Shown here: one piece after another, positions 5,301-44,900 of the stretch
How the letters are laid out: every line of letters begins with the position of its first letter
Numbering within the stretch: position 1 is the stretch's first letter
From: Pelomyxa schiedti
Taxonomy: Eukaryota > Protista > Evosea
Length of the DNA stretch: 64,000 nucleotides
Direction of reading: 5' to 3'
Assembly: GCA_020536535.1 (NCBI GenBank)
Contig: JAHLWZ010000693.1
Span: forward strand, 72,981 to 136,980
The notes under the pieces: generated by a model
Databases searched by the model: none
What the model was told of the DNA's origin: nothing
Seen by the model: only the letters and a program-made list of their open reading frames with translations
Translations under genes and position numbers: made by a program

Positions 5301-8300
5301 AGATTTGCCTACGGAAACAAACTGACTGCGCTCCCTTCGACTTTCTCAAAGCTCACTAATCTGACCCAACTGTATGTACTTCTTTTCTCGAATAGCGCTT
5401 AATTGGCAAAGGTTTTTGCAGGACAATCTTCTCTCGGGATCTGTCCCTGAAATGTTCGCTACAATGGAAGAACTGACCTATCTGTAAGTTTGTACTGTTC
5501 TAGATTGTTTTGACCACTGCCAAGGTACCTCTCTGACAACGCTTTGACTGGTAGTGTGCCTGTTTCTCTGGCTGACAGCAATATCAAATTCTTGTAAGAT
5601 TTTCCTGTAGTTTCTCGCGTTCTAATTTCCGAAAGGGATTTGAGCAATAACCAACTTTCTGGAACTCTTCCAGAAGAGATAGTGAGCTCTCAAATTTATT
5701 ATATGTTGCACCCCTTTGCTTTGCCTTGCTTTTGTAACTTCTCTTAGGGATCTGTCAAACAACCAGCTGAGCGGTTTGATCCCTGACAGAACCCCTCAGG
5801 ACGACAGTAATATGATTCAAATGTTTCCCTCTCCCCCTACATCGTGCCTTGTAATTTGCTGGTAGGGACCTTGGGGGCAATAGTTTCCGTTGCATGCTTC
5901 CGCCGTTTATGCGTTTGGACACTCTTAAGTTCAAGATCGATGTACAAGGAACTATTTTCTTCTGCCCAACGAACGAAATTTCTGCTGCTGTTGTCAATGA
6001 GGCCTGTGGTATGCTACGCTTCCCCCCAAAGTTCTGGATTCACTTTCCTCTAGAGAGTGTATTTATCAACAGTATTACCCCGTCTGACTGGAACGTTTCC
6101 AAAGGCTTCGATCACGTTGTTGCCACATTGAATGTATCTTCTGTTCACAAGTGTGCTGGTGTTGTTGTTGAGTTCTTGGGACTCGGTCTCGTTAAACCAT
6201 TCTCTGTTGCTGAGGATGAAATCAAAATTTACCTCCCGGAGGCGCCCACAGCGGCCTACCCACTGCGCATCAAGTGGTTGGGTGATTTCTACAACGATAC
6301 CTACATTTCCAGCAACATGGTTGATATTACTTACTGGAAGCCTTGCCCAGATAACTGTGTTAAACCTTATGGCGTTTGCATGGGCATAAGTGGAATTTGC
6401 CAGTGTAATACAACATGGGATGGGCCGGATTGCCACAGCAAAGCGTGCCCAGGCAATTGCAACAGTCATGGTGTGTGCGACGGTCTTACTGGTAAATGTA
6501 ATTGCACGGACCCGTGGTTTGGAGTTTCTTGTAATGCTGCTCGCCAGGATTGTGCCGCTTTGAATTACTGTTCTGGGTTTGTGTACTCTTGCTTTAGGTT
6601 ATCCTCACTTCCTCTGCAGAACCGGACAATGTGATATTTACAAAGGGACATGCTCGTGCTACCTTGGTTACTGGTGTGTGTACTCGGTCTCTTTCCAATT
6701 CTTACACATGTAGGGGTGATGACTGCTCTAATAAGACTTGCCCTCCTTACAAAAAACCATTTTGTAACCATGGGTGGTGTAACGGAACAGCGGGCACCTG
6801 TGTCTGCACTTCCGGGTGGGCAGGGGATGCTTGTGATAAGCCTGCAAAGCCCTGTCCAGCAAACTGTACCAATGAAGTTCAGGGAAGTTGTGACCTTGTC
6901 TCTGGTAAGTTTTTTATTGGCCCTTATTTTGTTTCACGTTTCCTCAGGAACTTGTGTGTGCTACCAGGTTGGATCGATAAAGTGGGGAGGCCCGAACTGC
7001 AGCGAGGCTGTGTGCCTTCCTGCTTGCGTTTCAGGTCAAGGCTCCTGTGAGAATAGCACCTGCAAGTGTGCGGCTGGATATCAAGGGGCAGACTGTGGCG
7101 TATTGCATATTCCTTGTCTCAATAATTGTACTGACCAAGGGTCTTGTGACTACCGATTTGGAAATTGCACCTGCGAATATGGTTTCAGGGTACTGTTCTT
7201 GTTCCTTTGTAGTGAATGTGTTAATTTTGTATAGGGAGAGGACTGCAGCCTTTTCGTCTGTGCAGGCACACCTGAGTGCAATTCGCCTCACGGCACCTGC
7301 AATCAAACGGATGGCACTTGCCTCTGCCAGGATGACCGAGGCACTACAGGAGAATACTATACCGGCTTCCGTTGCCAATACCAGAACTTCCAATGCCCAG
7401 GCACTCCTACGTGCTCTGGTCATGGTTTTTGTGACAAGTCTGACGGAATTTGTACCTGCTCTTATCCCTACGATTGGGCAAGTGCTACAGATTGTTCCAT
7501 TGCTTTATGTCCTAAAAACTGTTCCTACCCTCAAGGTACATATTTTTGAGGAACTTCATCTTTTTACCACTCCCTTTAGGAGTATGTGACAGATCCACTG
7601 GCAAGTGCGCGTGCACTTCGGAGTACAATACTACCCAGGACTGCTCCTATAAGCACAGTATATTACATTATCCATAAACCCTTTGCCGACAATTAATAAC
7701 AGTTGATTGCCCGGCAAGCTGCAACCACGGCTATTGTGATTACATGGTTGGAGAATGCAAGTGCGACGTTGGATACGGTGATGCCACCAACACCACTTAC
7801 TGTGATTTCCTACTGTGTCCCGCCAACTGTAACGGGCAGGGGGCCTGCATAAACGGGTCTTGCGACTGCATTACTGGTTTGTGTCTGAGTTTTTGTGATT
7901 TTCTGAACCTGGCTAAGGTTGGTCTGGATCCAGTTGTGCCATCTCCAATGTCAGTTGCCCTGATAACTGCAATGCCCCTAATGGCTACTGCACAACAGAC
8001 GGTGAATGTTTCTGCTACGGCACCTTCTATGGCCCCGCTTGCGCGGACAGTTGGCTTCTCTCTTTTCTTCCTTTTTTTTAAAAACCCTTTTAGAGAGTTG
8101 TTACTCTGGTTGCTCTGGGCATGGTCTCTGTGATACTGTCACAGGCACTTGCACCTGCGACCCTGGTTTTGAACTTCCGGACTGCTATATTAACTTGTGT
8201 TCATTGAACGACTACTGCACTTCCAACAAGCGTGGTACTTGTGATTCTCTGTCGGGAACGTGCAACTGCATTTCTCCGTATTGGGGATCCTCTTGCGAAA

Positions 8301-10387
8301 ATATTTGGTGTCCTTCGAACTGTACAGGACACGGGAATTGCTCATACGAAACGTTGTTCCTTTACCTTTATGTAAGTATTTAACGTTACGTAGTGGAGTG
8401 TGCACGTGTGAAGACGTCTATATAGGCACAGTATGTTTCTGTTTCCCTCATTTTTTCTTTCCCGCTGTGGTACTAAGGACAATAAAGGCTTGTGAGACCT
8501 TCTCTGTTGCTTGCCCTCCCGATCGTATGAATGAGTGCAATGGCAACGGCAAATGTGACAATACGGTGGGTGTCTGCGATTGCCAGAGCGGCTTCTTTGG
8601 TACAGAGTGCAACCAACGTATGTGTCCTTTCGTATAAATCGCCATTGACCTATAAAGGCTGGTGCCCAAATAACTGTTCTGATCATGGTACCTGCAATTA
8701 TGCAACTGGGGAATGCACATGTAACGTCGGTTGGAATGAGCCAACCGACATTACTTGCTCTGTGAGATACGTTGACTGCTTGTAGGTGTAGTTTCCTTGA
8801 CACTTTGTTGTAACTATACGCAGGGAGCCAAATTGCACTGGTAATGGCTTCTGCAATAAGTATATCGAGACGGCTGGGCACGGTACCTGTTATTGTTATT
8901 CCGGTTACTATGGAGACAGTTGCGAGTTCAAGTCTTGCCCTCCTCGTTGTGATGAGCACGGCACTTGTGAATCGAACGGCACTTGCACGTGTGACCAGTA
9001 TTGGAACGGGACTGCTTGTCTCGAGCCGACGAGTATGTGTTCCTTCCTTTGGTCTTATGTACCCATTTAAACAGAGCCATGCCCTGGTGATTGCTACACT
9101 CCTCATGGTACATGCAATCATGTTTCTGGAAACTGCACATGCGCTATACCTTATGAGCTACCCTATTGTCAATATGGTATCAATCAGCCACTCTTTTATA
9201 TTTTAATCATTGTTTTCCCAGCTCCGTGCTATTTGGATTGTTCTGGCCATGGTACCTGCATTCGAGAGAATGGCACCTGCACTTGCCAACAGTATTATAG
9301 TGGCGCTGGTTGTCAGATAGCCAACCTTCCTTGCGTTCCTTCCTGCACTATACATGGGAAGTGTGATCCGAAGTGCGCTTTCTCCTCAGTTAATTTTTTA
9401 TGTAACTCCGCTTCAGTACTGGAACTTGTGTGTGCTCTGGAGGTTTCCATGGAACTACGTGCAACAACAAAACTGTATGGGTTTCTAAATGCTTGTCCCT
9501 ATTTAACGGTTTCAGTGCCCTGGTGCGACACCCTGCAACAGCAAGGGTACCTGTGATTGGAGTACAGGAACGTGCACTTGCCCAGACCCAGAGTGGCAAG
9601 GGGATGCTTGCCAAATCCCCAACTGTGCGTTTTTACATTCTGACTTTTTTGGGTTTAACATGTGTCAAGTGCCTTGCCCCGGTAATTGTACAAATTCCAC
9701 ACACGGCCTGTGCAATGCCCAAACTGTAATCCCTCACACTCTCCAACAATCATTCTAAATCACAAAAGGGAACCTGCTCTTGCCGTTACCCTTACTTCGG
9801 GTCATCATGCTCCAACAGTACTTTCTTCCTTTCCCTTATTTTCCTCTTATGGTTCCCCAGTACACTGCCCAAATCAGTGCAGAGGCTACGGCACATGTAA
9901 TAACATCACCGGAGTTTGCACCTGCTTCGGAAGACATCTTCCTCCCGACTGCTTCTTCAGTAAGCCTTCACTCTTCTTGTTCTTCATACCACCCCTACTT
10001 ACTTTACCCACAGGCTCGTGCCCGGGTAACTGCAGCGGGCATGGTACCTGCAACCCATTCACTGGTCTGTGCACTTGCTCTCCTTATGACATGTGGGGCG
10101 GCGACGATTGCAACACCCGACTCTGCCCTATGGACTGCTCCGGCTCCGGCACATGCAAGAGCAGCGGCAAGTGCGATTGCAAGATTGGAACCACCGGCGA
10201 CGGTTGCCAGAAGGAGAACTGGTGGATAATCGTTGTCTGTGCCTGTGGTGGCTCCCTCATCCTGGTTGGTGGTGCCTTCGGTGCATTCATGGCCATCAGA
10301 CAGTTCCGAATCAGCCAAGCCACCAAGCGCAAGATAGCCAACCAAGGCAAGTACTCTAGTGCTGAGATGGCGCCCTCTGGGCATTGA
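2310..10387 (+). CDS. Giant type I membrane protein: signal peptide, two CBM-like (xEAE) modules, LamG/pentraxin domain, plant-type LRRs, Ig-like segment, about 28 tenascin-type EGF repeats, TM, short tail
   Basis: ATG 2310 MVCRLRRTRVILAALLAFVI; LTVEMWMQP..WYHVS..VTWD..IDELHIWNKVL (LamG); DLSNNQLSGTLP/DLSNNQLSGLIP (LRR); repeated CPxNCSGHGTCxxxTGxCxC across 6350-10210 (hand count about 28); TM WWIIVVCACGGSLILVGGAFGAFMAI; stop 10387. Confidence 0.85.
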
Positions 10388-10701
10388 GAGGTTGTTGAGT
10401 ATTAACGGGACAATACAACTGTCATTTTTAATTTTTTTTGTCCGACGCTGGCTTTTTTCTTTGCCTTCTTGCTTCGTAAGGGGAGCCACTCCACTACTCT
10501 GTTCTCGTAGTACCGCACAGATTGGTTAGCTCTCGTACCTCTAGATCTAAAAAAAGTGGGTGGCACAGTGCAACTCTTAGCTGTGTTGCAAGCTAAAATC
10601 TACACCAGATTTCACGTTTCTTCTAAACGCTTTCTCCTTCCACCATCATAAAACGGGCTCTTTTTATTCAACGTTTTTCGACAACCAAATTTCAGTAATA
10701 A

Positions 10702-12427
<1,726 letters not shown>

Positions 12428-12577
12428 GACCTCCCCTTTACATAAGCAGACCTTGGTGCATAAGCTACCAAACTGACTGACCACTGAGCATGCGAATACC
12501 GCAGTGCACTGGGTCTGCAGCAAAAGGGGGGGTGTAAAACACCTCTACACAGCAGGCTGATAACGCGGGTCTGGAGG

Positions 12578-12649
12578 TGTGCTCTGGTGACGAAGTGGGA
12601 CAACAAATACCTGCTTGGTAATGTTCTGCTACTGATGATATTGAGCACA
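12578..12649 (+). promoter_or_regulatory. Eukaryotic type II SECIS element in the TrxR 3' UTR
   Basis: Helix I TGTGCTC(12578-84)/GAGCACA(12643-49); core GTGAC(12587-91)/TGAT(12633-36); helix II GAAGTGGGAC/GTTCTGCTAC; apical unpaired AACAAA; mini-helix TACC/GGTA. Pairing was derived by hand. Confidence 0.88.
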
Positions 12650-12747
12650 AGAAAAACCTCTGGAACCACGTTTTGGCCAAATCCACGACACAAACCAAAC
12701 CTATCCAATTAAAAACACAAAGACAAACTAAAAGAAAGTACTTTTTG

Positions 12748-13215
12748 TTACTCCAAGCTCTTTCTAGTCTTTTTTGTGAGCCCGCCCCTGATTTCCTTGA
12801 AGATGCGATCAACTTGCAACTTGTTGAAAGCTTCGGAACCCGAGTGGAAGGAATACAACGCGGAATCAAATCGTTGAACGAGGCTGTGGTTGCAACAAGA
12901 GTTATTCAGGCACAGATTTCTGAGGGTCAGGAGATGTGCCTCCAGCATCTCAAGCGACTTCTGAAAACGAGCAATGGCGCGTTGGGCGGCCGACACCGAA
13001 ATCAGATCGCAACTTGCGCGTTCAAGCACTGAAGTCAGAATTGTGGTGAGCTCGTCACTGGCGCACTCGAGCTCCTCGTTGGCGTCGCACACGTGATTGG
13101 CACAATCACGGATAGAGAGAGGGTCCTCCTTCAGAGTGAGATTTGCAACCTGCGCACACAGAGTGTTGATTTGTTCCGACAACGACGGTTGTTCTTCTCG
13201 TTGCATGTCTGCCAT
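12748..13215 (-). CDS. Hypothetical intronless helical/coiled-coil protein (about 155 aa)
   Basis: Open frame from ATG 13215 (MADMQREEQPSLSEQINTL...) to stop 12748; heptad-like composition; no recognisable motif. Confidence 0.5.
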   Translation of the reverse strand: MADMQREEQPSLSEQINTLCAQVANLTLKEDPLSIRDCANHVCDANEELECASDELTTILTSVLERASCDLISVSAAQRAIARFQKSLEMLEAHLLTLRNLCLNNSCCNHSLVQRFDSALYSFHSGSEAFNKLQVDRIFKEIRGGLTKKTRKSLE

Positions 13216-13419
13216 GTTGTTTTTAATCAGCAGGAATCCTGTTGTGTGTGATTCACTCGTTGTGTAAAACGACTTACTTCCCTGGGTGCGGTATTCCGTA
13301 GTCTTGGACAACGCCTCGTGCTCGGTGCCTCTTTTTCGTTTTGCTGTCCGTTTTGTTTTTGGTTTCCCTTAAAAAGTGCCGAAAAAAACTTGACCTTATC
13401 ACCGGTGACCTGTACATTG

Positions 13420-29683: not shown

Positions 29684-32142
29684 ATGACTGAGGGTGCTGC
29701 GGCAGGCGCGACGTCTGGTGGCACTTCCCTTTCCCATGCGGAAAGCAACAGTGCAGCGAACGGTGGGAGTTGCGCACAGAGCGACAACCCAGTTACCCTG
29801 CAACCTCCTCCCGCCGTCGCGATCCCAAACGCGCCGCAGACTCAGTCCCAGTCCGGAACTGCCGTAACACGCGCCGACAACTGTTGCCCTCAGCAACAAG
29901 TGACAGGGACTCCTCCCAATCCCACACCCCAAACCCAAAGCAACGCCGACGCAGCAACTAGTGCCGGCGTAAGCAGCACGCAACCGCAACAACAATCGCA
30001 ATCGCAGTCATCACAACAGCCTGGCGCAATGCAAATGCAAACGCCAATGCAAATTCAGAACAAAAGCGAGCAGCACCCTCTGGATGCCACGTTCGCGAGC
30101 TGCGCTCAGCAGATGCAAATGCAAATGCAACACCAGCAGATGGTGCAGCAGAAACAGCAGCAGCAACAGCAGCAGTTCTTGCAATTCCAGCAGCAGCTGC
30201 AGCTTCTGCAGTCGCACGCGTCACCTCAGTCGCCCGCGCCATGTCCGGCACCCACGCCGACTCCCCAGGCTCCCCCTTCCCAGCCCACTCAGACCGCTGC
30301 GTCCAACGACCTAGGCATTCTTCCACCATCGAGTGTGGCCACACGCGCTGCAAGTGCGGCGGCGCAGCTTCCGTTGGATCCGCAGCTGCAGCAACTCTTA
30401 CAACAACTTGACGCACACGCCTTGCAGCAATTGCTGTCAACTTCGCAGGAAGTGCTTTTCCAATCGACGGGGTCACAGACTTCTTCCCAACATCAGCAGC
30501 TGCAGCTTCTTCAACAATTACAACAGCACCTAGTGATACAACAGCAACAGGCTATTTTACAACAGCAGCAGAAAAATGAACAGCCAAGTGAGAATCATTC
30601 GCAAGCGTTGAGCAAAGGACTCCCATTGAATCACGCAGCACAACATGAACAAATACAAAAGAACTTGCTCATGTTGCATCAGCAACAATCACAGCAGTTA
30701 CAACAACTGCAACAGCAACAGCAGCAACTTCAACAAAAGCAACTTTTTCAACGCCAGCAGCAGCTACAACAAATGTACCAGCAGACTGCCCACCAAATTG
30801 TTTCTCAGCCAAGTCCCCAGCAATCACAAACCGTACAACCAGTACCACCGCCACAAGCCTCCCCTCCTAGCCTTCAGTCACCTCAAGTCTCACAAACTTT
30901 TCAACACCAGTCAATGCCACAAAATGCACCTCAGCAGACACAGCAAACCACACCACAACCCCAAACGCCTCCCCCACAGCAATCTCCTCAGCAAACTATC
31001 TACCAATCACAACAATTACCGCAACAGACTGTTTCCCTACCTTTTGGTTCGATGTCTTTCAACAAACAAAACACACAACAAACCTCTGCTTATGCTCCAC
31101 AGCTTTGCTCAAGCCCACAACAGCAAATGCAAACGGCTCAGTCTACTACTGCAACACACACTGGAACCCTTCAACTCCAGGTTTCAAGGCACTATGGATT
31201 CTAAATGTCTGACCCCGCTTTCTCCAGTGCAACGACTTACCAACTATACTTAAACTGTGTGAAGCAGTTGGCCAGTATGTTTCAGATTCAAACCAGCACA
31301 AGATAGATTGGAATCACATAAGTCGGAGTATGCCGTGGAGTCCTAGGTGATTCTGTTGTTCCTTTTGTTGTTTTTAAAATTAAGTACAGTGAATGCCAAG
31401 CTGTGTGGCGTCATATTGCATACTCTTGGAAACCCGAGGATGTTACCGGATCAACATTGGTAGTTATAAACTGGAATGCGTCTGATTCACCCATTGTAGA
31501 ACACTACAGAGCTTGACGGTAATGAAAGTGATGAAGAACAATTGTTGAAATCCATGGTAAGGGCTCCACGCACTTTCATGACTGGATAATTGTGCACAGC
31601 ACCCAAAAGTCCTGCAACCCTCTCCTCAAATCCAGCCACAAATGGACACATCATATACCAAGATTCTCCAACCTACTGGAAATTATCTACCCAAACAGGA
31701 AGCCGAAGAACCACCAACTGTAAAACTGCGCAATATTTACTCCAACTGACATGTCTTGAGAAAAAAGGTAGAAAGCGCAAAGTCTGGAAACCAGAGGATG
31801 ATGTTGCACTTTTAGACGCCGTGGAGTTGTATGGCGAGTGTATGTACTTTTTTTGCCGTTATACCGCACTCTTACAAGCAAAGCAAACTGGCCATACCTT
31901 GCCCAACAACTTTCCCACTTAGAAAGAAGTCATTCACAATTGAGCTCTCGCTATACAGCCTTGAGGAAGAAGGTCTAATTATTTCCATCAACTGAAAGCT
32001 GATTCTCTAAAAGGCTCAGAAGGGTAACTGTGGTGATGCCCGTATCAAATGGAAACTCGATTGCATTGCCAAGAAGGTACATACAACCAACACAAAAAGC
32101 TGTTTGTTTCCTCATCCAATGCAGAGTGAAAAGCAGTCATGA
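29684..32142 (+). CDS. Polyglutamine-rich Myb/SANT transcription regulator
   Basis: 506-codon Q-rich exon; later exons KIDWNHIS, ECQAVWRHIAY, KRKVWKPEDDVALLDAVELYGE..NW..LA..ERSHSQLSSRY; stop inferred at 32140-32142. Confidence 0.75.
30100..31150 (+). repeat. CAG/CAA polyglutamine-coding low-complexity tract
   Basis: Dense cag/caa runs; explains several spurious overlapping ORFs. Confidence 0.85.
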
Positions 32143-41962: not shown

Positions 41963-44900
41963 TTAATCCTCTATCATGTAAGGCGATAGTTTCTTGAAGT
42001 CCAGTGGTTCAAAGGCATACCCGTCACCCTCTGTGCAAATGTGAGTTGGGGGAAAAAGGATTAGGATGGGATAGTACGGTAGAATTTGTTTTGAAACTCC
42101 ACCCTGGATAAAAATTACAATTAGCTAAACAGCCAGTAAAAAAGAAAGGGAAAACCAATGAAGTCGAAGTGCGTGCAAGAAAGCGGATAGCGCCTCCATC
42201 ACCAGAAGTACACCAATGGTTGCTCCTCCCCAAACGGCGAAGCCAGCAAAAATTTCTATGAAGTTCTTGGACTTGATTGTTGTAAGAAGCACTTGCTCGT
42301 AAAACACCAAAGACAATTCTGTGAGATGCTTAAGAAAATAGGGTACATAACAAACTCATACCGGCATGTGCCAAGCTAAGTGCCCAAAGTCGAAGGTAAG
42401 ATGCAGTATTTGAGATGCATCCCAGAACGAACTCGATTGTGTGAATTGCTTGGTGAATGAAGGCCTCACTGAAAACAAACTCTTCGCCGTGGCCTCCATG
42501 GCCTCCCCCTCCATGTGATTCTGGCGTTGTTACAGCACCTATAGCCTCTAGCTCCACGTCCTCACTAGCTTCCTTGAGAATTACATGTTTAGCTGCACGT
42601 TTGCTCTGCCACAGTTGAATAAATGGCTTTGGCAGTAGCATAACGAAAATTGCAATGACAGAGACTATAGCAATGGCTGTTTGGACCGACGCCTGATTTG
42701 TAAATTAGAAGCCTATTCAACAATAATGAGTGGTAACCTGTCCAGGGTACATCTCCTCCTCCTTAGGTAAATTTCCGAAGGACAAAAATATATCAATCAG
42801 AACGTTAATGAGGTAGGGCTCATTTTCACGCATTTTTGTCCATTTCAGGAAAATTAGGACAACCAAGTAACCAAACAGGAGGTTCATAAACAGAATCTGA
42901 TGCATGAAGAACATTAAATCTCGGGAGAGAATCAAAGGGGGGATGTAACTTGTGGTATGAAGTCAAAAATAATGTTGAGAGGCTTTCGGAAGTGAATGTG
43001 ATTAAACAAACCCATGATAATTCCCAGTGTCATCTTCATACTCTTAGTGATGAACAAATAAGAAAAAAAGAGAAACCTGGACGACCCCAAAAATTACTGA
43101 TAACTTCATTTTGAAGGAGTTGTAGTAATAAAGTTCGTTATCGGCACCTTTCCAAATCTATTTAATGTTATCGGTGAACCCCTCCAGTACGATGCATACA
43201 GAGTCTACACCGAATTCGTATACTCTGTCCGGGTCCTTAGTACACCAGTTGTTTTCATCACAAGTCCACGCGGTACCACACAAATTCACACCAATTCCAA
43301 AAACCTTCATGGATAAGTTATCGAAAGAGTGAATGATCATTACGTCGTTGTAGATGAAACCAGTGAAGATTGAAAAGAGAGCCATGAACAACAAAAGATA
43401 CCGCCCATTGAACAGCATGAAAACGATCTAGGGAAGATTTACACATCACCATAAAAGAGACAAGTTCCTACCTCATTCAACTTCATCTTTCCCATTTTTT
43501 TCTCGAAGAATATCAGACACAATGTGAATAGTAGCATCATTACAGCATGTCCTGTATCCCCAAACATCACAGCAAACAAGAAGGGGAACGTTATCAACGA
43601 GAATACCGCTGTAAACAGTCATTGATTGTGGAAACGGGCGAAAAGTTCTACTTGGGTTGACTTCTCCATAGCGAGGTGTTCCATAGGCATCAATGATAAC
43701 TTGCATACAGTAGGTAAATTTATTTGTTTGGTAAAACGTGGGAGGCTCCTCATCAATTGGTATAATGCTCATGATAGTAGCTACCTGGGAGCCACTTCTG
43801 GCCTTTTAGGTTATCAAAATTAGGTTTCTGGTGGGGTAATAGGTGTATTGCTCTTACAGTTGCTCTGTTAAGAGCATTCAATATCTCATCGGTGGCACTC
43901 GTTGGGCACCAGCCTTCCGCAATGAGGCATCTGCATATGGGTTGGGTATTAATGGAAGGTGAAGAAAATGGAGACATACTTTCTACCAACATCATAGTTA
44001 AACATGTTTAATGTGTGATATGTGGCCTTTTCTTTTCTTACTAGAATAACCCACGTGGGCATTGACTGGTTGACAGTAGCAAGCAATTCTCTGCGGTGTT
44101 GTGATGACCTCTCAATCACCTGGAAGGTGGGAGAAAAAGGGAAAAACTCATGTAGAGAACACACAGTTTTCATGTCTTCAAGTCTGCCAGAAACCTGGGT
44201 GAGCAGAGTTTGGCGTTCAGTGTTTGTTTCTGGTACATTAAAGACTCGTGCGCTGAAAGATTCGCAAATTTTGTGAATTTTCACTTGCGATTGCTGCCCC
44301 TGGCAAAAAATGAAGAATACACATTTCTCTACAGGTTCGCCCTGGGTGATACGTTAAGTTACAAATGGGAATAACTCAGCTTACTGTTGATGGGTCAACA
44401 ATCTTCTCCTCAATAGGCTCAACTTTCATTACCAGATTACCACGGAGGACACGCCACAAAACACGCTCAAAATGAACAAATTCCGTTTTTGATATAACTC
44501 CTGCCACCATTCTGAGGCGAGTTAAACGTAAAAAAGGAATGCAGTTGTACTTACACAAGCTTGCCCACAGAACCTGCTCCTCCCTCCTCCAACAAATTCT
44601 TCTTATTTATGTCATCTGAACTTATTTCCATATCCTGTTTCCCAAAGAAAACCGATCACACAAGGTTGAGCAAAAAAGAAAGCATACTGGGAGTGTCTCG
44701 TCATACATGTTGCTCTTCAGGGCGCACCGCATCTCAGTCAACTCATTGAAATTTCTAAGCAATACTTCTTGGTTGCCGTTAATTTGTCGTAAATCGCGCT
44801 CTTGAGTATCAAGGAAAGCCTGGTAATATGAAATTAAAGGTAAAAACTCCAAAACAAAAAATTTAGATACCTCAAGTTCGCTGAGATCCAATGGTTTTTC

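What the first reader, a model, noticed from the sequence alone, without database searches (positions are those of the whole stretch)
12578..12649. Hand-folded type II SECIS with a GUGA core about 165 nt after the UGA
Seen: helix I TGTGCTC/GAGCACA, the quartet UGAC/UGAU preceded by G rather than the usual A, a 10-bp helix II (one A-A mismatch, G-U pairs), unpaired AACAAA, and the apical mini-stem UACC/GGUA. GUGA-type SECIS are a less common known variant. This is independent support for Sec recoding and gives a lineage template for finding other selenoprotein genes.
Basis: partly seen in the sequence, partly recalled or inferred. Interest (0 to 1): 0.7.

Follow-up and report, generated by a model that had tools for sequence, protein, structure and literature searches.

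The report
SECIS hairpin behind Pelomyxa TrxR gene
The hairpin is very probably the RNA signal that lets the thioredoxin reductase mRNA of the anaerobic amoeba Pelomyxa schiedti read its UGA as selenocysteine. It is a known kind of element in a known G-variant, and is useful mainly for finding selenoprotein genes that the annotation of this genome missed.

Summary
At 12578-12649 (+) there is a 7-bp helix I and a G before a UGAC/UGAU quartet. Helix II has 11 positions: 10 pairs, one A·A mismatch, three G·U. Then come an unpaired ACAAA and a UACC/GGUA mini-stem. The core starts 165 nt after the UGA of a thioredoxin reductase gene that ends Gly-Cys-UGA-Gly-UAA.

The interpretation as a type II, GUGA-type SECIS is supported. 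I found three more SECIS hairpins in this genome, each behind a gene with UGA at a known Sec site: membrane selenoprotein, a Trx-fold redoxin and SPS2. All share GUGA[C/U]G, a 10-11-nt arm, NN-AAA, a mini-stem and CUGAUG.

A covariance model built from those three alone ranks this element first in the whole window (24.0 bits, E 9e-5; next hit 11.9 bits). A descriptor taken from two of them hits only this site, and hit nothing in 5 Mb of random sequence. The genome also has tRNA-Sec, SepSecS and a Sec-SPS2.

Rfam SECIS_1 misses all four.

The scan had already noted GUGA SECIS elements on other pieces of this genome. This is a new member of a known kind, of modest interest.

The parts
12050..12427 (+). 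Last exon of the thioredoxin reductase gene. It encodes the dimerisation domain and ends GGA TGC TGA GGT TAA: Sec codon TGA at 12419-12421, true stop TAA at 12425-12427.
   Evidence: Pfam Pyr_redox_dim E = 1.3e-28. Sequence read. 70 of 80 environmental relatives end with the same G-C-UGA-G-stop.
12578..12649 (+). Complete SECIS element, type II, GUGA core.
   Evidence: Top hit of leave-one-out model R3 at 12576-12651, 24.0 bits, E = 9e-5. Only descriptor hit in the window. RNAfold z = -3.3.
12578..12584 (+). Helix I, 5' arm TGTGCTC. It pairs with 12643-12649.
   Evidence: The helix I columns covary among the four SECIS.
12587..12591 (+). G preceding the quartet, plus the 5' half of the non-Watson-Crick quartet (GUGAC).
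   Evidence: Invariant GTGA[C/T]G in all four SECIS of this genome.
12592..12602 (+). Helix II, 5' arm (11 nt). It pairs with 12622-12632: 10 standard pairs and one A·A.
   Evidence: Pair list. Helix II columns are 90.7% paired, and 6 pairs have changes on both sides.
12603..12607 (+). Unpaired 5' bulge ACAAA carrying the conserved AAA (AAR motif).
   Evidence: AAA is invariant and in the same column in all four SECIS.
12608..12620 (+). Apical mini-stem UACC/GGUA with loop UGCUU. This is the type II feature.
   Evidence: The mini-stem columns are 93.8% paired, and 3 of 4 pairs have changes on both sides.
12622..12632 (+). Helix II, 3' arm.
12633..12636 (+). 3' half of the quartet (UGAU). It sits within an invariant CUGAUG.
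   Evidence: The Rfam SECIS_1 consensus has the same cCUGAU.
12643..12649 (+). Helix I, 3' arm GAGCACA.
12708..12713 (+). ATTAAA, a possible poly(A) signal 58 nt after the SECIS. This is inference only.
   Evidence: It and an ACTAAA at 12727 are the only AAUAAA-like hexamers between the stop codon and the convergent ORF. There is none between the stop and the SECIS.

Best explanation
This is the SECIS element of the thioredoxin reductase mRNA of Pelomyxa schiedti.

Proposed mechanism (inferred from established knowledge of eukaryotic Sec insertion): in the 3'UTR the RNA folds into helix I, an internal loop, a kink-turn-like core and helix II. The core is made of tandem sheared G·A pairs (GUGAC at 12587-12591 against UGAU at 12633-12636). 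A bulged AAA and a small apical stem follow, which makes it type II. An SBP2-type protein would bind the core and recruit eEFSec carrying Sec-tRNA(Sec). The ribosome then reads the penultimate codon UGA (12419-12421) as selenocysteine, so the enzyme ends in the redox-active Gly-Cys-Sec-Gly.

Shown here: the sequence and fold, its match to other SECIS of the same genome, its position and strand, and the presence of tRNA-Sec, SepSecS and SPS2.

Inferred, not shown: binding, recoding, and inclusion in the mature transcript.

The G in place of the usual A before UGA is the norm in this genome, not a peculiarity of this gene.
For: 1. All the anatomy is present at the stated bases.

2. The gene is a bona fide large TrxR. 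It has Pyr_redox_2, Pyr_redox and Pyr_redox_dim domains, a [13 protein letters not shown] centre and the C-terminal GGA TGC TGA GGT TAA. It is single-copy.

3. Three further SECIS exist in the same genome, each behind a gene with UGA at a classical Sec site:
   - membrane selenoprotein (MSP), GS-U-CWP, at C605;
   - a redoxin, SW-U-GGC, at C439;
   - SPS2, TRLKG-U-G(CK), at C4.

4. Model R3, built from those three without the TrxR element, scores 12576-12651 at 24.0 bits, E = 9e-5. It is the best of both strands of the 64-kb window with filters off; the next hit is 11.9 bits, E 0.84.

5. In the four-way alignment, 92.8% of cells are paired and 15 of 21 pairs have changes on both sides. With partners slid by 1 to 3 columns, at most 51% of cells pair. 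GTGA[C/T]G, AAA and CTGATG are invariant.

6. The descriptor from MSP and redoxin hits only this site in the window, and nothing in 5 Mb of random sequence.

7. Sec machinery is present: tRNA-Sec at 67.9 bits with anticodon TCA and SepSecS.

8. The core lies 159 nt after the stop codon. In the redoxin the distance is 129 nt, and in SPS2 about 55-90 nt.

9. No AAUAAA-like hexamer lies between the stop and the SECIS, and ATTAAA follows it.
Against: - Rfam SECIS_1 gives no hit here, even at E <= 10. It also fails on the MSP and redoxin SECIS, and gives the SPS2 one only 18 bits against a 35-bit threshold. So this shows low sensitivity of the model rather than a failed test.
- The unconstrained minimum-energy fold prefers a helix II register shifted by 3 nt, which would break the quartet. 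It is 4 kcal/mol better.
- Helix II is weak: one A·A and three G·U.
- A convergent ORF ends at 12748, only 99 nt after the SECIS, so 3'-end formation must happen in a short space.
- No close orthologue was found for a phylogenetic test. The best relatives are at most 70% identical in protein, and the nearest one has an AUGA SECIS.
- eEFSec could not be told apart from other GTPases. SBP2 was not searched for.
Confidence: 0.88

Rival explanations
1. The hairpin is a chance structure. The UGA is a true stop, and the enzyme ends at Gly-Cys without selenocysteine.
For: Rfam SECIS_1 is silent. My first, crude SECIS pattern also gave two other hits in the window, at 31522 and 44346.
Against: The leave-one-out model gives E = 9e-5. 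The descriptor found nothing in 5 Mb of random sequence. The UGA is followed by GGT TAA, exactly as in 70 of 80 environmental Sec-TrxRs. The Sec machinery and three other SECIS-bearing genes are present. The two crude hits are not supported by R3: at most 9.1 bits.
Confidence: 0.03
2. The element is a real SECIS-like sequence but lies outside the mature mRNA because polyadenylation occurs upstream. It could also be a decaying relic. In either case it does not act.
For: There is no transcript evidence. The intergenic space to the convergent ORF is only 320 nt.
Against: There is no AAUAAA-like signal between the stop and the SECIS, and ATTAAA lies 58 nt after it. All conserved SECIS positions are intact. 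A TrxR with UGA in GCUG needs a SECIS, and this is the only candidate in the region.
Confidence: 0.05
3. The stem-loop serves another 3'UTR role in the shifted minimum-energy register. It might act in mRNA stability, in 3'-end formation, or as a barrier between the two convergent genes. Its resemblance to a SECIS would then be secondary.
For: The minimum-energy fold uses a register that disrupts the quartet. A second long hairpin lies just upstream at 12429-12533, z = -3.7.
Against: The same register-specific geometry recurs behind three unrelated Sec genes, with compensatory changes: an 11-nt arm, NN-AAA and a 4-bp mini-stem. Energy models do not credit sheared G·A tandems.
Confidence: 0.04

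Closest known systems
Eukaryotic SECIS element, type (form) II, GUGA variant, as reported for Chlamydomonas, Ostreococcus and the sponge Amphimedon (PMC3473315)
   Same: The same core (G-UGA-N / N-GA-N), an unpaired AA(A) about 11-14 nt after the UGA, an extra apical mini-stem, and a location in the 3'UTR. In those lineages too, G replaces the usual A in most or many of the organism's SECIS. R2 also picks up GUGA SECIS behind TrxR genes of GC-rich marine eukaryotes (L100 and L102).
   Different: The lineage differs: this is an anaerobic archamoeba. I found no paper in the library that reports selenoproteins or SECIS for Pelomyxa or Archamoebae.
Acanthamoeba castellanii TrxR-L SECIS (PMC8038987)
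   Same: An amoebozoan large TrxR whose UGA is followed by GGT and UAA, with a SECIS in the 3'UTR and tRNA-Sec in the genome.
   Different: The Acanthamoeba element was predicted as type 1 and lies 282-355 nt after the UAA. This one is type II and begins 151 nt after the TAA, with its GUGA core starting 159 nt after it.
Rfam SECIS_1 (RF00031)
   Same: The Rfam consensus AUGAcG ... uAAA ... cCUGAU matches the invariant GUGA[C/U]G ... AAA ... CUGAUG found here.
   Different: There is no match to this element at E <= 10. The best Pelomyxa SECIS (SPS2) reaches only 18 of the 35 bits needed.
The other SECIS of the same genome: MSP at C605:6397-6479, redoxin at C439:48981-49056(-), SPS2 at C4:373164-373245(-)
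   Same: GUGA core, a G-C first pair of helix II, a 10-11-nt arm, NN-AAA, a 3-4-bp mini-stem and a 3' CUGAUG.
   Different: The helices have unrelated sequences, so these are independent elements and not copies. The TrxR helix II is the weakest of the four, and its score under R3 is 24 bits against 72-80 for the training members.
TrxR SECIS of the nearest relative found (unidentified eukaryote, L136, 70% protein identity)
   Same: The same GGA TGC TGA GGT TAA ending, a type II SECIS about 120 nt after the stop, and a long hairpin directly after the stop codon.
   Different: Its core is AUGA, and R2 does not score it.

Membership tests
Eukaryotic SECIS element | A core quartet of non-Watson-Crick pairs with tandem G·A (5' UGA-N opposite 3' N-GA-N) | tested here: met
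   UGAC at 12588-12591 lies opposite UGAU at 12633-12636, directly flanked by helix II. The same columns are invariant in four SECIS. The sheared geometry itself is inferred.
Eukaryotic SECIS element | A (or, in some lineages, G) immediately 5' of the UGA | tested here: met
   G at 12587. G is the known minority variant (PMC3473315) and is found in 4 of 4 verified SECIS of this genome.
Eukaryotic SECIS element | A helix II of about 9-14 bp leading to an unpaired AA(R) motif | tested here: met
   There are 11 positions, 10 of them paired, then ACAAA. The AAA starts 14 nt after the UGA, as in MSP and the redoxin.
Eukaryotic SECIS element | Helix I closing an internal loop below the core | tested here: met
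   A 7-bp TGTGCTC/GAGCACA helix, with internal loops of 2(+G) nt and 6 nt.
Eukaryotic SECIS element | Type II: an additional mini-stem above the AAR bulge | tested here: met
   UACC/GGUA with a 5-nt loop. Compensatory changes occur in 3 of 4 pairs across the four SECIS.
Eukaryotic SECIS element | Lies in the 3'UTR of an mRNA that has an in-frame UGA at a Sec position | tested here: inconclusive
   By genomic position and strand it is met: the element begins 151 nt, and its GUGA core 159 nt, after the TAA of a GCUG-ending TrxR. Only indirect poly(A)-signal evidence exists.
Eukaryotic SECIS element | Scores above the gathering threshold of Rfam SECIS_1 (a classifier, not a biological property) | tested here: not met
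   No hit at E <= 10. Three positive controls from the same genome also fail, the best reaching 18 of 35 bits, so the test has no power here.
Eukaryotic SECIS element | Matches a lineage-specific SECIS model that was trained without it | tested here: met
   R3 gives 24.0 bits, E = 9e-5, and it is the top hit of the window.
Eukaryotic SECIS element | Binds SBP2 and directs UGA-to-Sec recoding | not testable with these tools
   This needs a reporter, 75Se labelling or a binding assay.
Selenoprotein (large, animal-type) thioredoxin reductase | Pyridine nucleotide-disulfide oxidoreductase fold, an N-terminal CVNVGC centre and a C-terminal Gly-Cys-Sec-Gly | tested here: met
   Pfam domains on four exons, [13 protein letters not shown], and GGA TGC TGA GGT TAA.
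Organism able to insert Sec | tRNA-Sec, SepSecS, SPS, eEFSec and SBP2 are present | tested here: inconclusive
   tRNA-Sec, SepSecS and SPS2 with a Sec codon are found. eEFSec could not be separated from other GTPases. SBP2 was not searched for.

The most novel reading that the evidence does not exclude
Pelomyxa, and perhaps free-living Archamoebae in general, may use one rigid SECIS form for its whole selenoproteome. That form is GUGA[C/U]G, a 10-11-nt arm, NN-AAA, a 3-4-bp mini-stem and CUGAUG. G would be obligatory before the quartet, implying an SBP2 tuned to this form. Standard detectors miss it, so a selenoproteome would have gone unreported in a lineage whose parasitic relative Entamoeba is taken to lack Sec.
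Probability: 0.35. Interest if true: 0.4.

Novelty: new member of a known kind. Interest (0 to 1): 0.3.

Why it matters
The finding fixes the annotation of one enzyme: the public model stops two residues short and loses the catalytic Sec. Together with the three other elements, it also gives a tested search model for the selenoprotein genes that the Pelomyxa schiedti annotation missed.

It adds a free-living anaerobic amoebozoan to the organisms in which most SECIS carry G instead of A before the quartet. That bears on how SBP2 and SECIS co-vary between lineages, and on when Sec use was lost on the way to Entamoeba. Nothing here changes the known mechanism.

Tried and rejected
- **Rfam.** The window at gathering score and the region at E <= 10 gave no SECIS. 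A whole-genome search with RF00031 gave none. The four small SECIS loci gave only SPS2, at 18 bits. I rejected this as a test because the positive controls fail.
- **Single-sequence model R1 (MSP only).** It finds only itself genome-wide. In the window the TrxR element is not in the top 15. It scores 6.8 bits when aligned directly. The model is too sequence-specific.
- **Model R2 genome scan.** It returned the training members plus a weak GC-rich hit at C93 without a GUGA core, which I judged spurious. Only 150 of 1183 candidates were scored, and the SPS2 SECIS was missed.
- **Pfam searches of the genome.** Rdx, GSHPx, DSBA and Selenoprotein_S gave nothing. SelK gave a low-complexity false hit. 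MsrB has Cys. Short exons defeat this route.
- **The C853 SelD.** It is a NifS-fused Cys form with no SECIS downstream.
- **Pattern GTGAN{14}AAAN{22,28}TGAT.** It gave 473 hits and only 100 were listed, so it was not usable.
- **ATGA counterpart of the working pattern.** It gave 31 hits. The only one with an adjacent helix II (C1018) has no helix I and no gene upstream, so I rejected it.
- **Crude SECIS finder.** Its hits at window 31522 and 44346 are not supported by R3.
- **Transcript evidence.** It did not name the stretch as human-like, so I went on using references to it in other tools.
- **Search for transcript fragments.** The search for homologous proteins with the last exon found no P. 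schiedti fragment; the best hit was 70% identical.
- **Metagenome relatives.** They are at most 69% identical, so no orthologous SECIS is available for covariation.
- **selB family search for eEFSec.** It matched GTPase domains only.
- **Spliced protein.** Exons were searched one by one by reference.

Full report
**What is there**

The finding sits just downstream of a multi-exon gene on the + strand, at about 10717-12427. Its exons hit the Pyr_redox_2, Pyr_redox and Pyr_redox_dim families. The gene encodes the N-terminal redox centre [13 protein letters not shown]. It ends GGA TGC TGA GGT TAA, with TGA at 12419-12421 and TAA at 12425-12427. That is the Gly-Cys-Sec-Gly end of large, animal-type thioredoxin reductases. 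Of 80 environmental relatives of the last exon, 70 end in the same way. The gene is single-copy in this assembly.

**The observation**

| Part | Coordinates |
|---|---|
| Helix I | 12578-12584 with 12643-12649 |
| G before the quartet | 12587 |
| Quartet | UGAC 12588-12591 opposite UGAU 12633-12636 |
| Helix II | 12592-12602 with 12622-12632 (10 standard pairs, one A·A, three G·U) |
| Unpaired bulge | ACAAA 12603-12607 |
| Mini-stem | UACC 12608-12611 with GGUA 12617-12620, loop UGCUU |

The GUGA core starts 165 nt after the UGA and 159 nt after the TAA.

RNAfold of 12570-12660 gives -26.5 kcal/mol, z = -3.3, and none of 200 shuffles folds as well. That unconstrained fold keeps helix I and the mini-stem but slides helix II by 3 nt. 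For the 72-nt element alone (12578-12649), the SECIS register costs -19.2 kcal/mol against -23.2 for the minimum. Nearest-neighbour energies give no credit to tandem sheared G·A pairs, so this alone does not decide the register. The comparison below does.

**Is it a SECIS?**

Rfam SECIS_1 does not see it. This holds at gathering score, at E <= 10 on 600 nt, and when the 93-nt locus that holds the element is given in a 384-nt search. I therefore looked for independent SECIS in the same genome.

The window is G000:C693:72981-136980. The assembly has 52,367,397 bases in 5337 contigs. This matches the published Pelomyxa schiedti assembly of 52.4 Mb in 5337 scaffolds (PMC8887013), as earlier notes of this scan had said.

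The genome has:
- a tRNA-Sec (67.9 bits, anticodon TCA);
- SepSecS;
- two selenophosphate synthetases. One, on C853, is fused to a NifS-like domain and has Cys. The other, on C4, has an in-frame TGA in TRLKG-U-G.

I found a hairpin 0.8 kb downstream of its UGA: GUGA-U, an 11-bp helix II, GU-AAA, and a UCCA/UGGA mini-stem.

A pattern built on GUGA...AAA...CUGAUGA then found a third element on C439. It lies 129 nt after the stop of a thioredoxin-fold gene with SW-U-GGC. A model built from these elements found a fourth, about 55-90 nt behind the Sec-SPS2 on C4.

**Independent tests**

1. **Descriptor test.** I wrote a descriptor from the MSP and redoxin geometry only: GUGA-N, an 11-nt arm, NN-AAA, a 4-bp mini-stem, a 3-6-nt loop, a 0-2-nt linker, an 11-12-nt arm with at least 9 pairs, then UGAU. 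It hits exactly one place on both strands of the window, 12587-12636. It hits nothing else in the other loci held at that point. It hit nothing in 5 Mb of first-order Markov sequence.

2. **Leave-one-out model.** Covariance model R3 was built from the MSP, redoxin and SPS2 elements without the TrxR one. I ran it unfiltered over the whole window. It ranks 12576-12651 first, end to end, at 24.0 bits and E = 9e-5. The runner-up has 11.9 bits, E 0.84. One caveat applies: the training alignment was produced by model R2, which had seen the TrxR element. Its letters are not in R3.

3. **Covariation.** When the four elements are aligned by R3, 92.8% of cells are paired. 15 of 21 pairs change on both sides, and none of 500 shuffles reaches the observed values. 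Sliding the partners by 1-3 columns leaves at most 51% paired. The alignment is fitted to the structure, which favours it. However, the four helices are unrelated in sequence, so the agreement does not come from common descent.

**What is conserved**

GUGA[C/U]G, AAA and CUGAUG are invariant in the four. Apart from the first G, this is simply the general eukaryotic consensus: Rfam's SECIS_1 consensus reads AUGAcG...uAAA...cCUGAU.

The A-version of the pattern that recovers the GUGA elements gave 31 genomic hits, none of them SECIS-like. The G-version gave 48 hits. Among them are TrxR, MSP, the redoxin and one further plausible element at C1344:3824-3875(-). So G before the quartet looks like the rule in this organism, as described for Chlamydomonas, Ostreococcus and a sponge (PMC3473315).

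**Mechanism**

Established knowledge of eukaryotic Sec insertion applies. The kink-turn-like core is bound by SBP2, which brings eEFSec carrying Sec-tRNA(Sec) to the ribosome at the UGA. Here this completes the Gly-Cys-Sec-Gly redox centre.

What is shown: the sequence and fold, the lineage match, the position, and part of the machinery.

What is inferred: binding, recoding, and that the element is in the mature mRNA.

**What could not be tested**

It did not name the stretch as human-like, so I continued with other tools.

A protein word search with the last exon found no P. schiedti transcript fragment.

Indirect evidence points the right way. No AAUAAA-like hexamer lies between the stop and the SECIS. 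ATTAAA lies at 12708, 58 nt after the SECIS. A convergent ORF ends at 12748, so the two 3' ends are close or overlap.

**Relatives**

No close orthologue is available. The nearest TrxR (70% identity, unidentified eukaryote, L136) has the same UGA-GGT-TAA end and a type II SECIS with an AUGA core about 120 nt after the stop. Acanthamoeba TrxR-L has a predicted type 1 SECIS 282-355 nt after its UAA (PMC8038987).

**Literature**

The library holds no paper that links Pelomyxa, Mastigamoeba or Archamoebae with selenoproteins or SECIS. The genome paper contains neither 'selen' nor 'thioredoxin'. This shows absence from that library only.

**Verdict**

It is a new member of a known kind, a type II GUGA SECIS, in a lineage not yet described as using Sec. 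Earlier entries of this scan had already noted GUGA SECIS and hidden selenoprotein genes on other pieces of this genome. The added value here is the tested lineage model, not a discovery of principle.

Noticed in passing
window 12429-12533 (+); compare L136:3345-3415: A long hairpin begins 2 nt after the TAA (GACCUCCCCUUU ... AAAGGGGGGGU), between the stop and the SECIS. Folding 12416-12545 gives -48.9 kcal/mol, z = -3.7. The nearest foreign TrxR (L136) also has an 11-bp stem closing about 50 nt directly after its TAA. It may shorten the effective UGA-to-SECIS distance or act like a Sec redefinition element.
   Followed up: partly
G000:C4:372400-375400 (L055, minus strand) and G000:C853:67668-68775 (L002-L004): There are two selenophosphate synthetases. 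The C4 gene has an in-frame TGA in TRLKG-U-G(CK) and a GUGA SECIS at C4:373164-373245. The C853 gene has Cys (GCACK), is fused to a NifS-like C-terminal region upstream, ends in TAG, and has no SECIS.
   Followed up: partly
G000:C439:48981-49056 (-), L031: A thioredoxin-fold gene with SW-U-GGC (TGA at the first CxxC cysteine) and a GUGA type II SECIS 129 nt after its TAA. A run of N lies just upstream in the locus.
   Followed up: partly
G000:C1344:3824-3875 (-): By eye this is a further SECIS-like match: GUGA-A, a 13-nt arm, AAA, a CCAC/GUGG mini-stem and CUGAUG.
   Followed up: no
window 12748-13311 (-): A convergent 187-aa ORF has its stop codon only 99 nt from the end of the SECIS. The 3'UTRs of the two genes must be short or overlap.
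   Followed up: no
window 31522-31587 (+) and 44346-44391 (+): My first, loose SECIS pattern also matched here (AUGA and GUGA cores). The lineage model gives no hit at E <= 10 for the first and only 9.1 bits (E 6.8) around the second, so both are probably chance.
   Followed up: partly
window about 7700-10400 (+): Upstream of the TrxR gene is a long run of cysteine-rich, EGF/tenascin-like repeats split by short introns. The ORF translations are full of CxCxxGxxGxxC motifs.
   Followed up: no
L100:2118-2191 and L102:2127-2182: GC-rich marine metagenome contigs carry Sec-TrxR genes with GUGA-type SECIS (GUGACG...AAA...CUGAUGA) that the Pelomyxa model detects at 17.7-18.4 bits. This fits the reported GUGA habit of prasinophyte-like green algae.
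   Followed up: no
window (position not looked up): The window contains 100 N, an assembly gap, somewhere outside the region studied.
   Followed up: no
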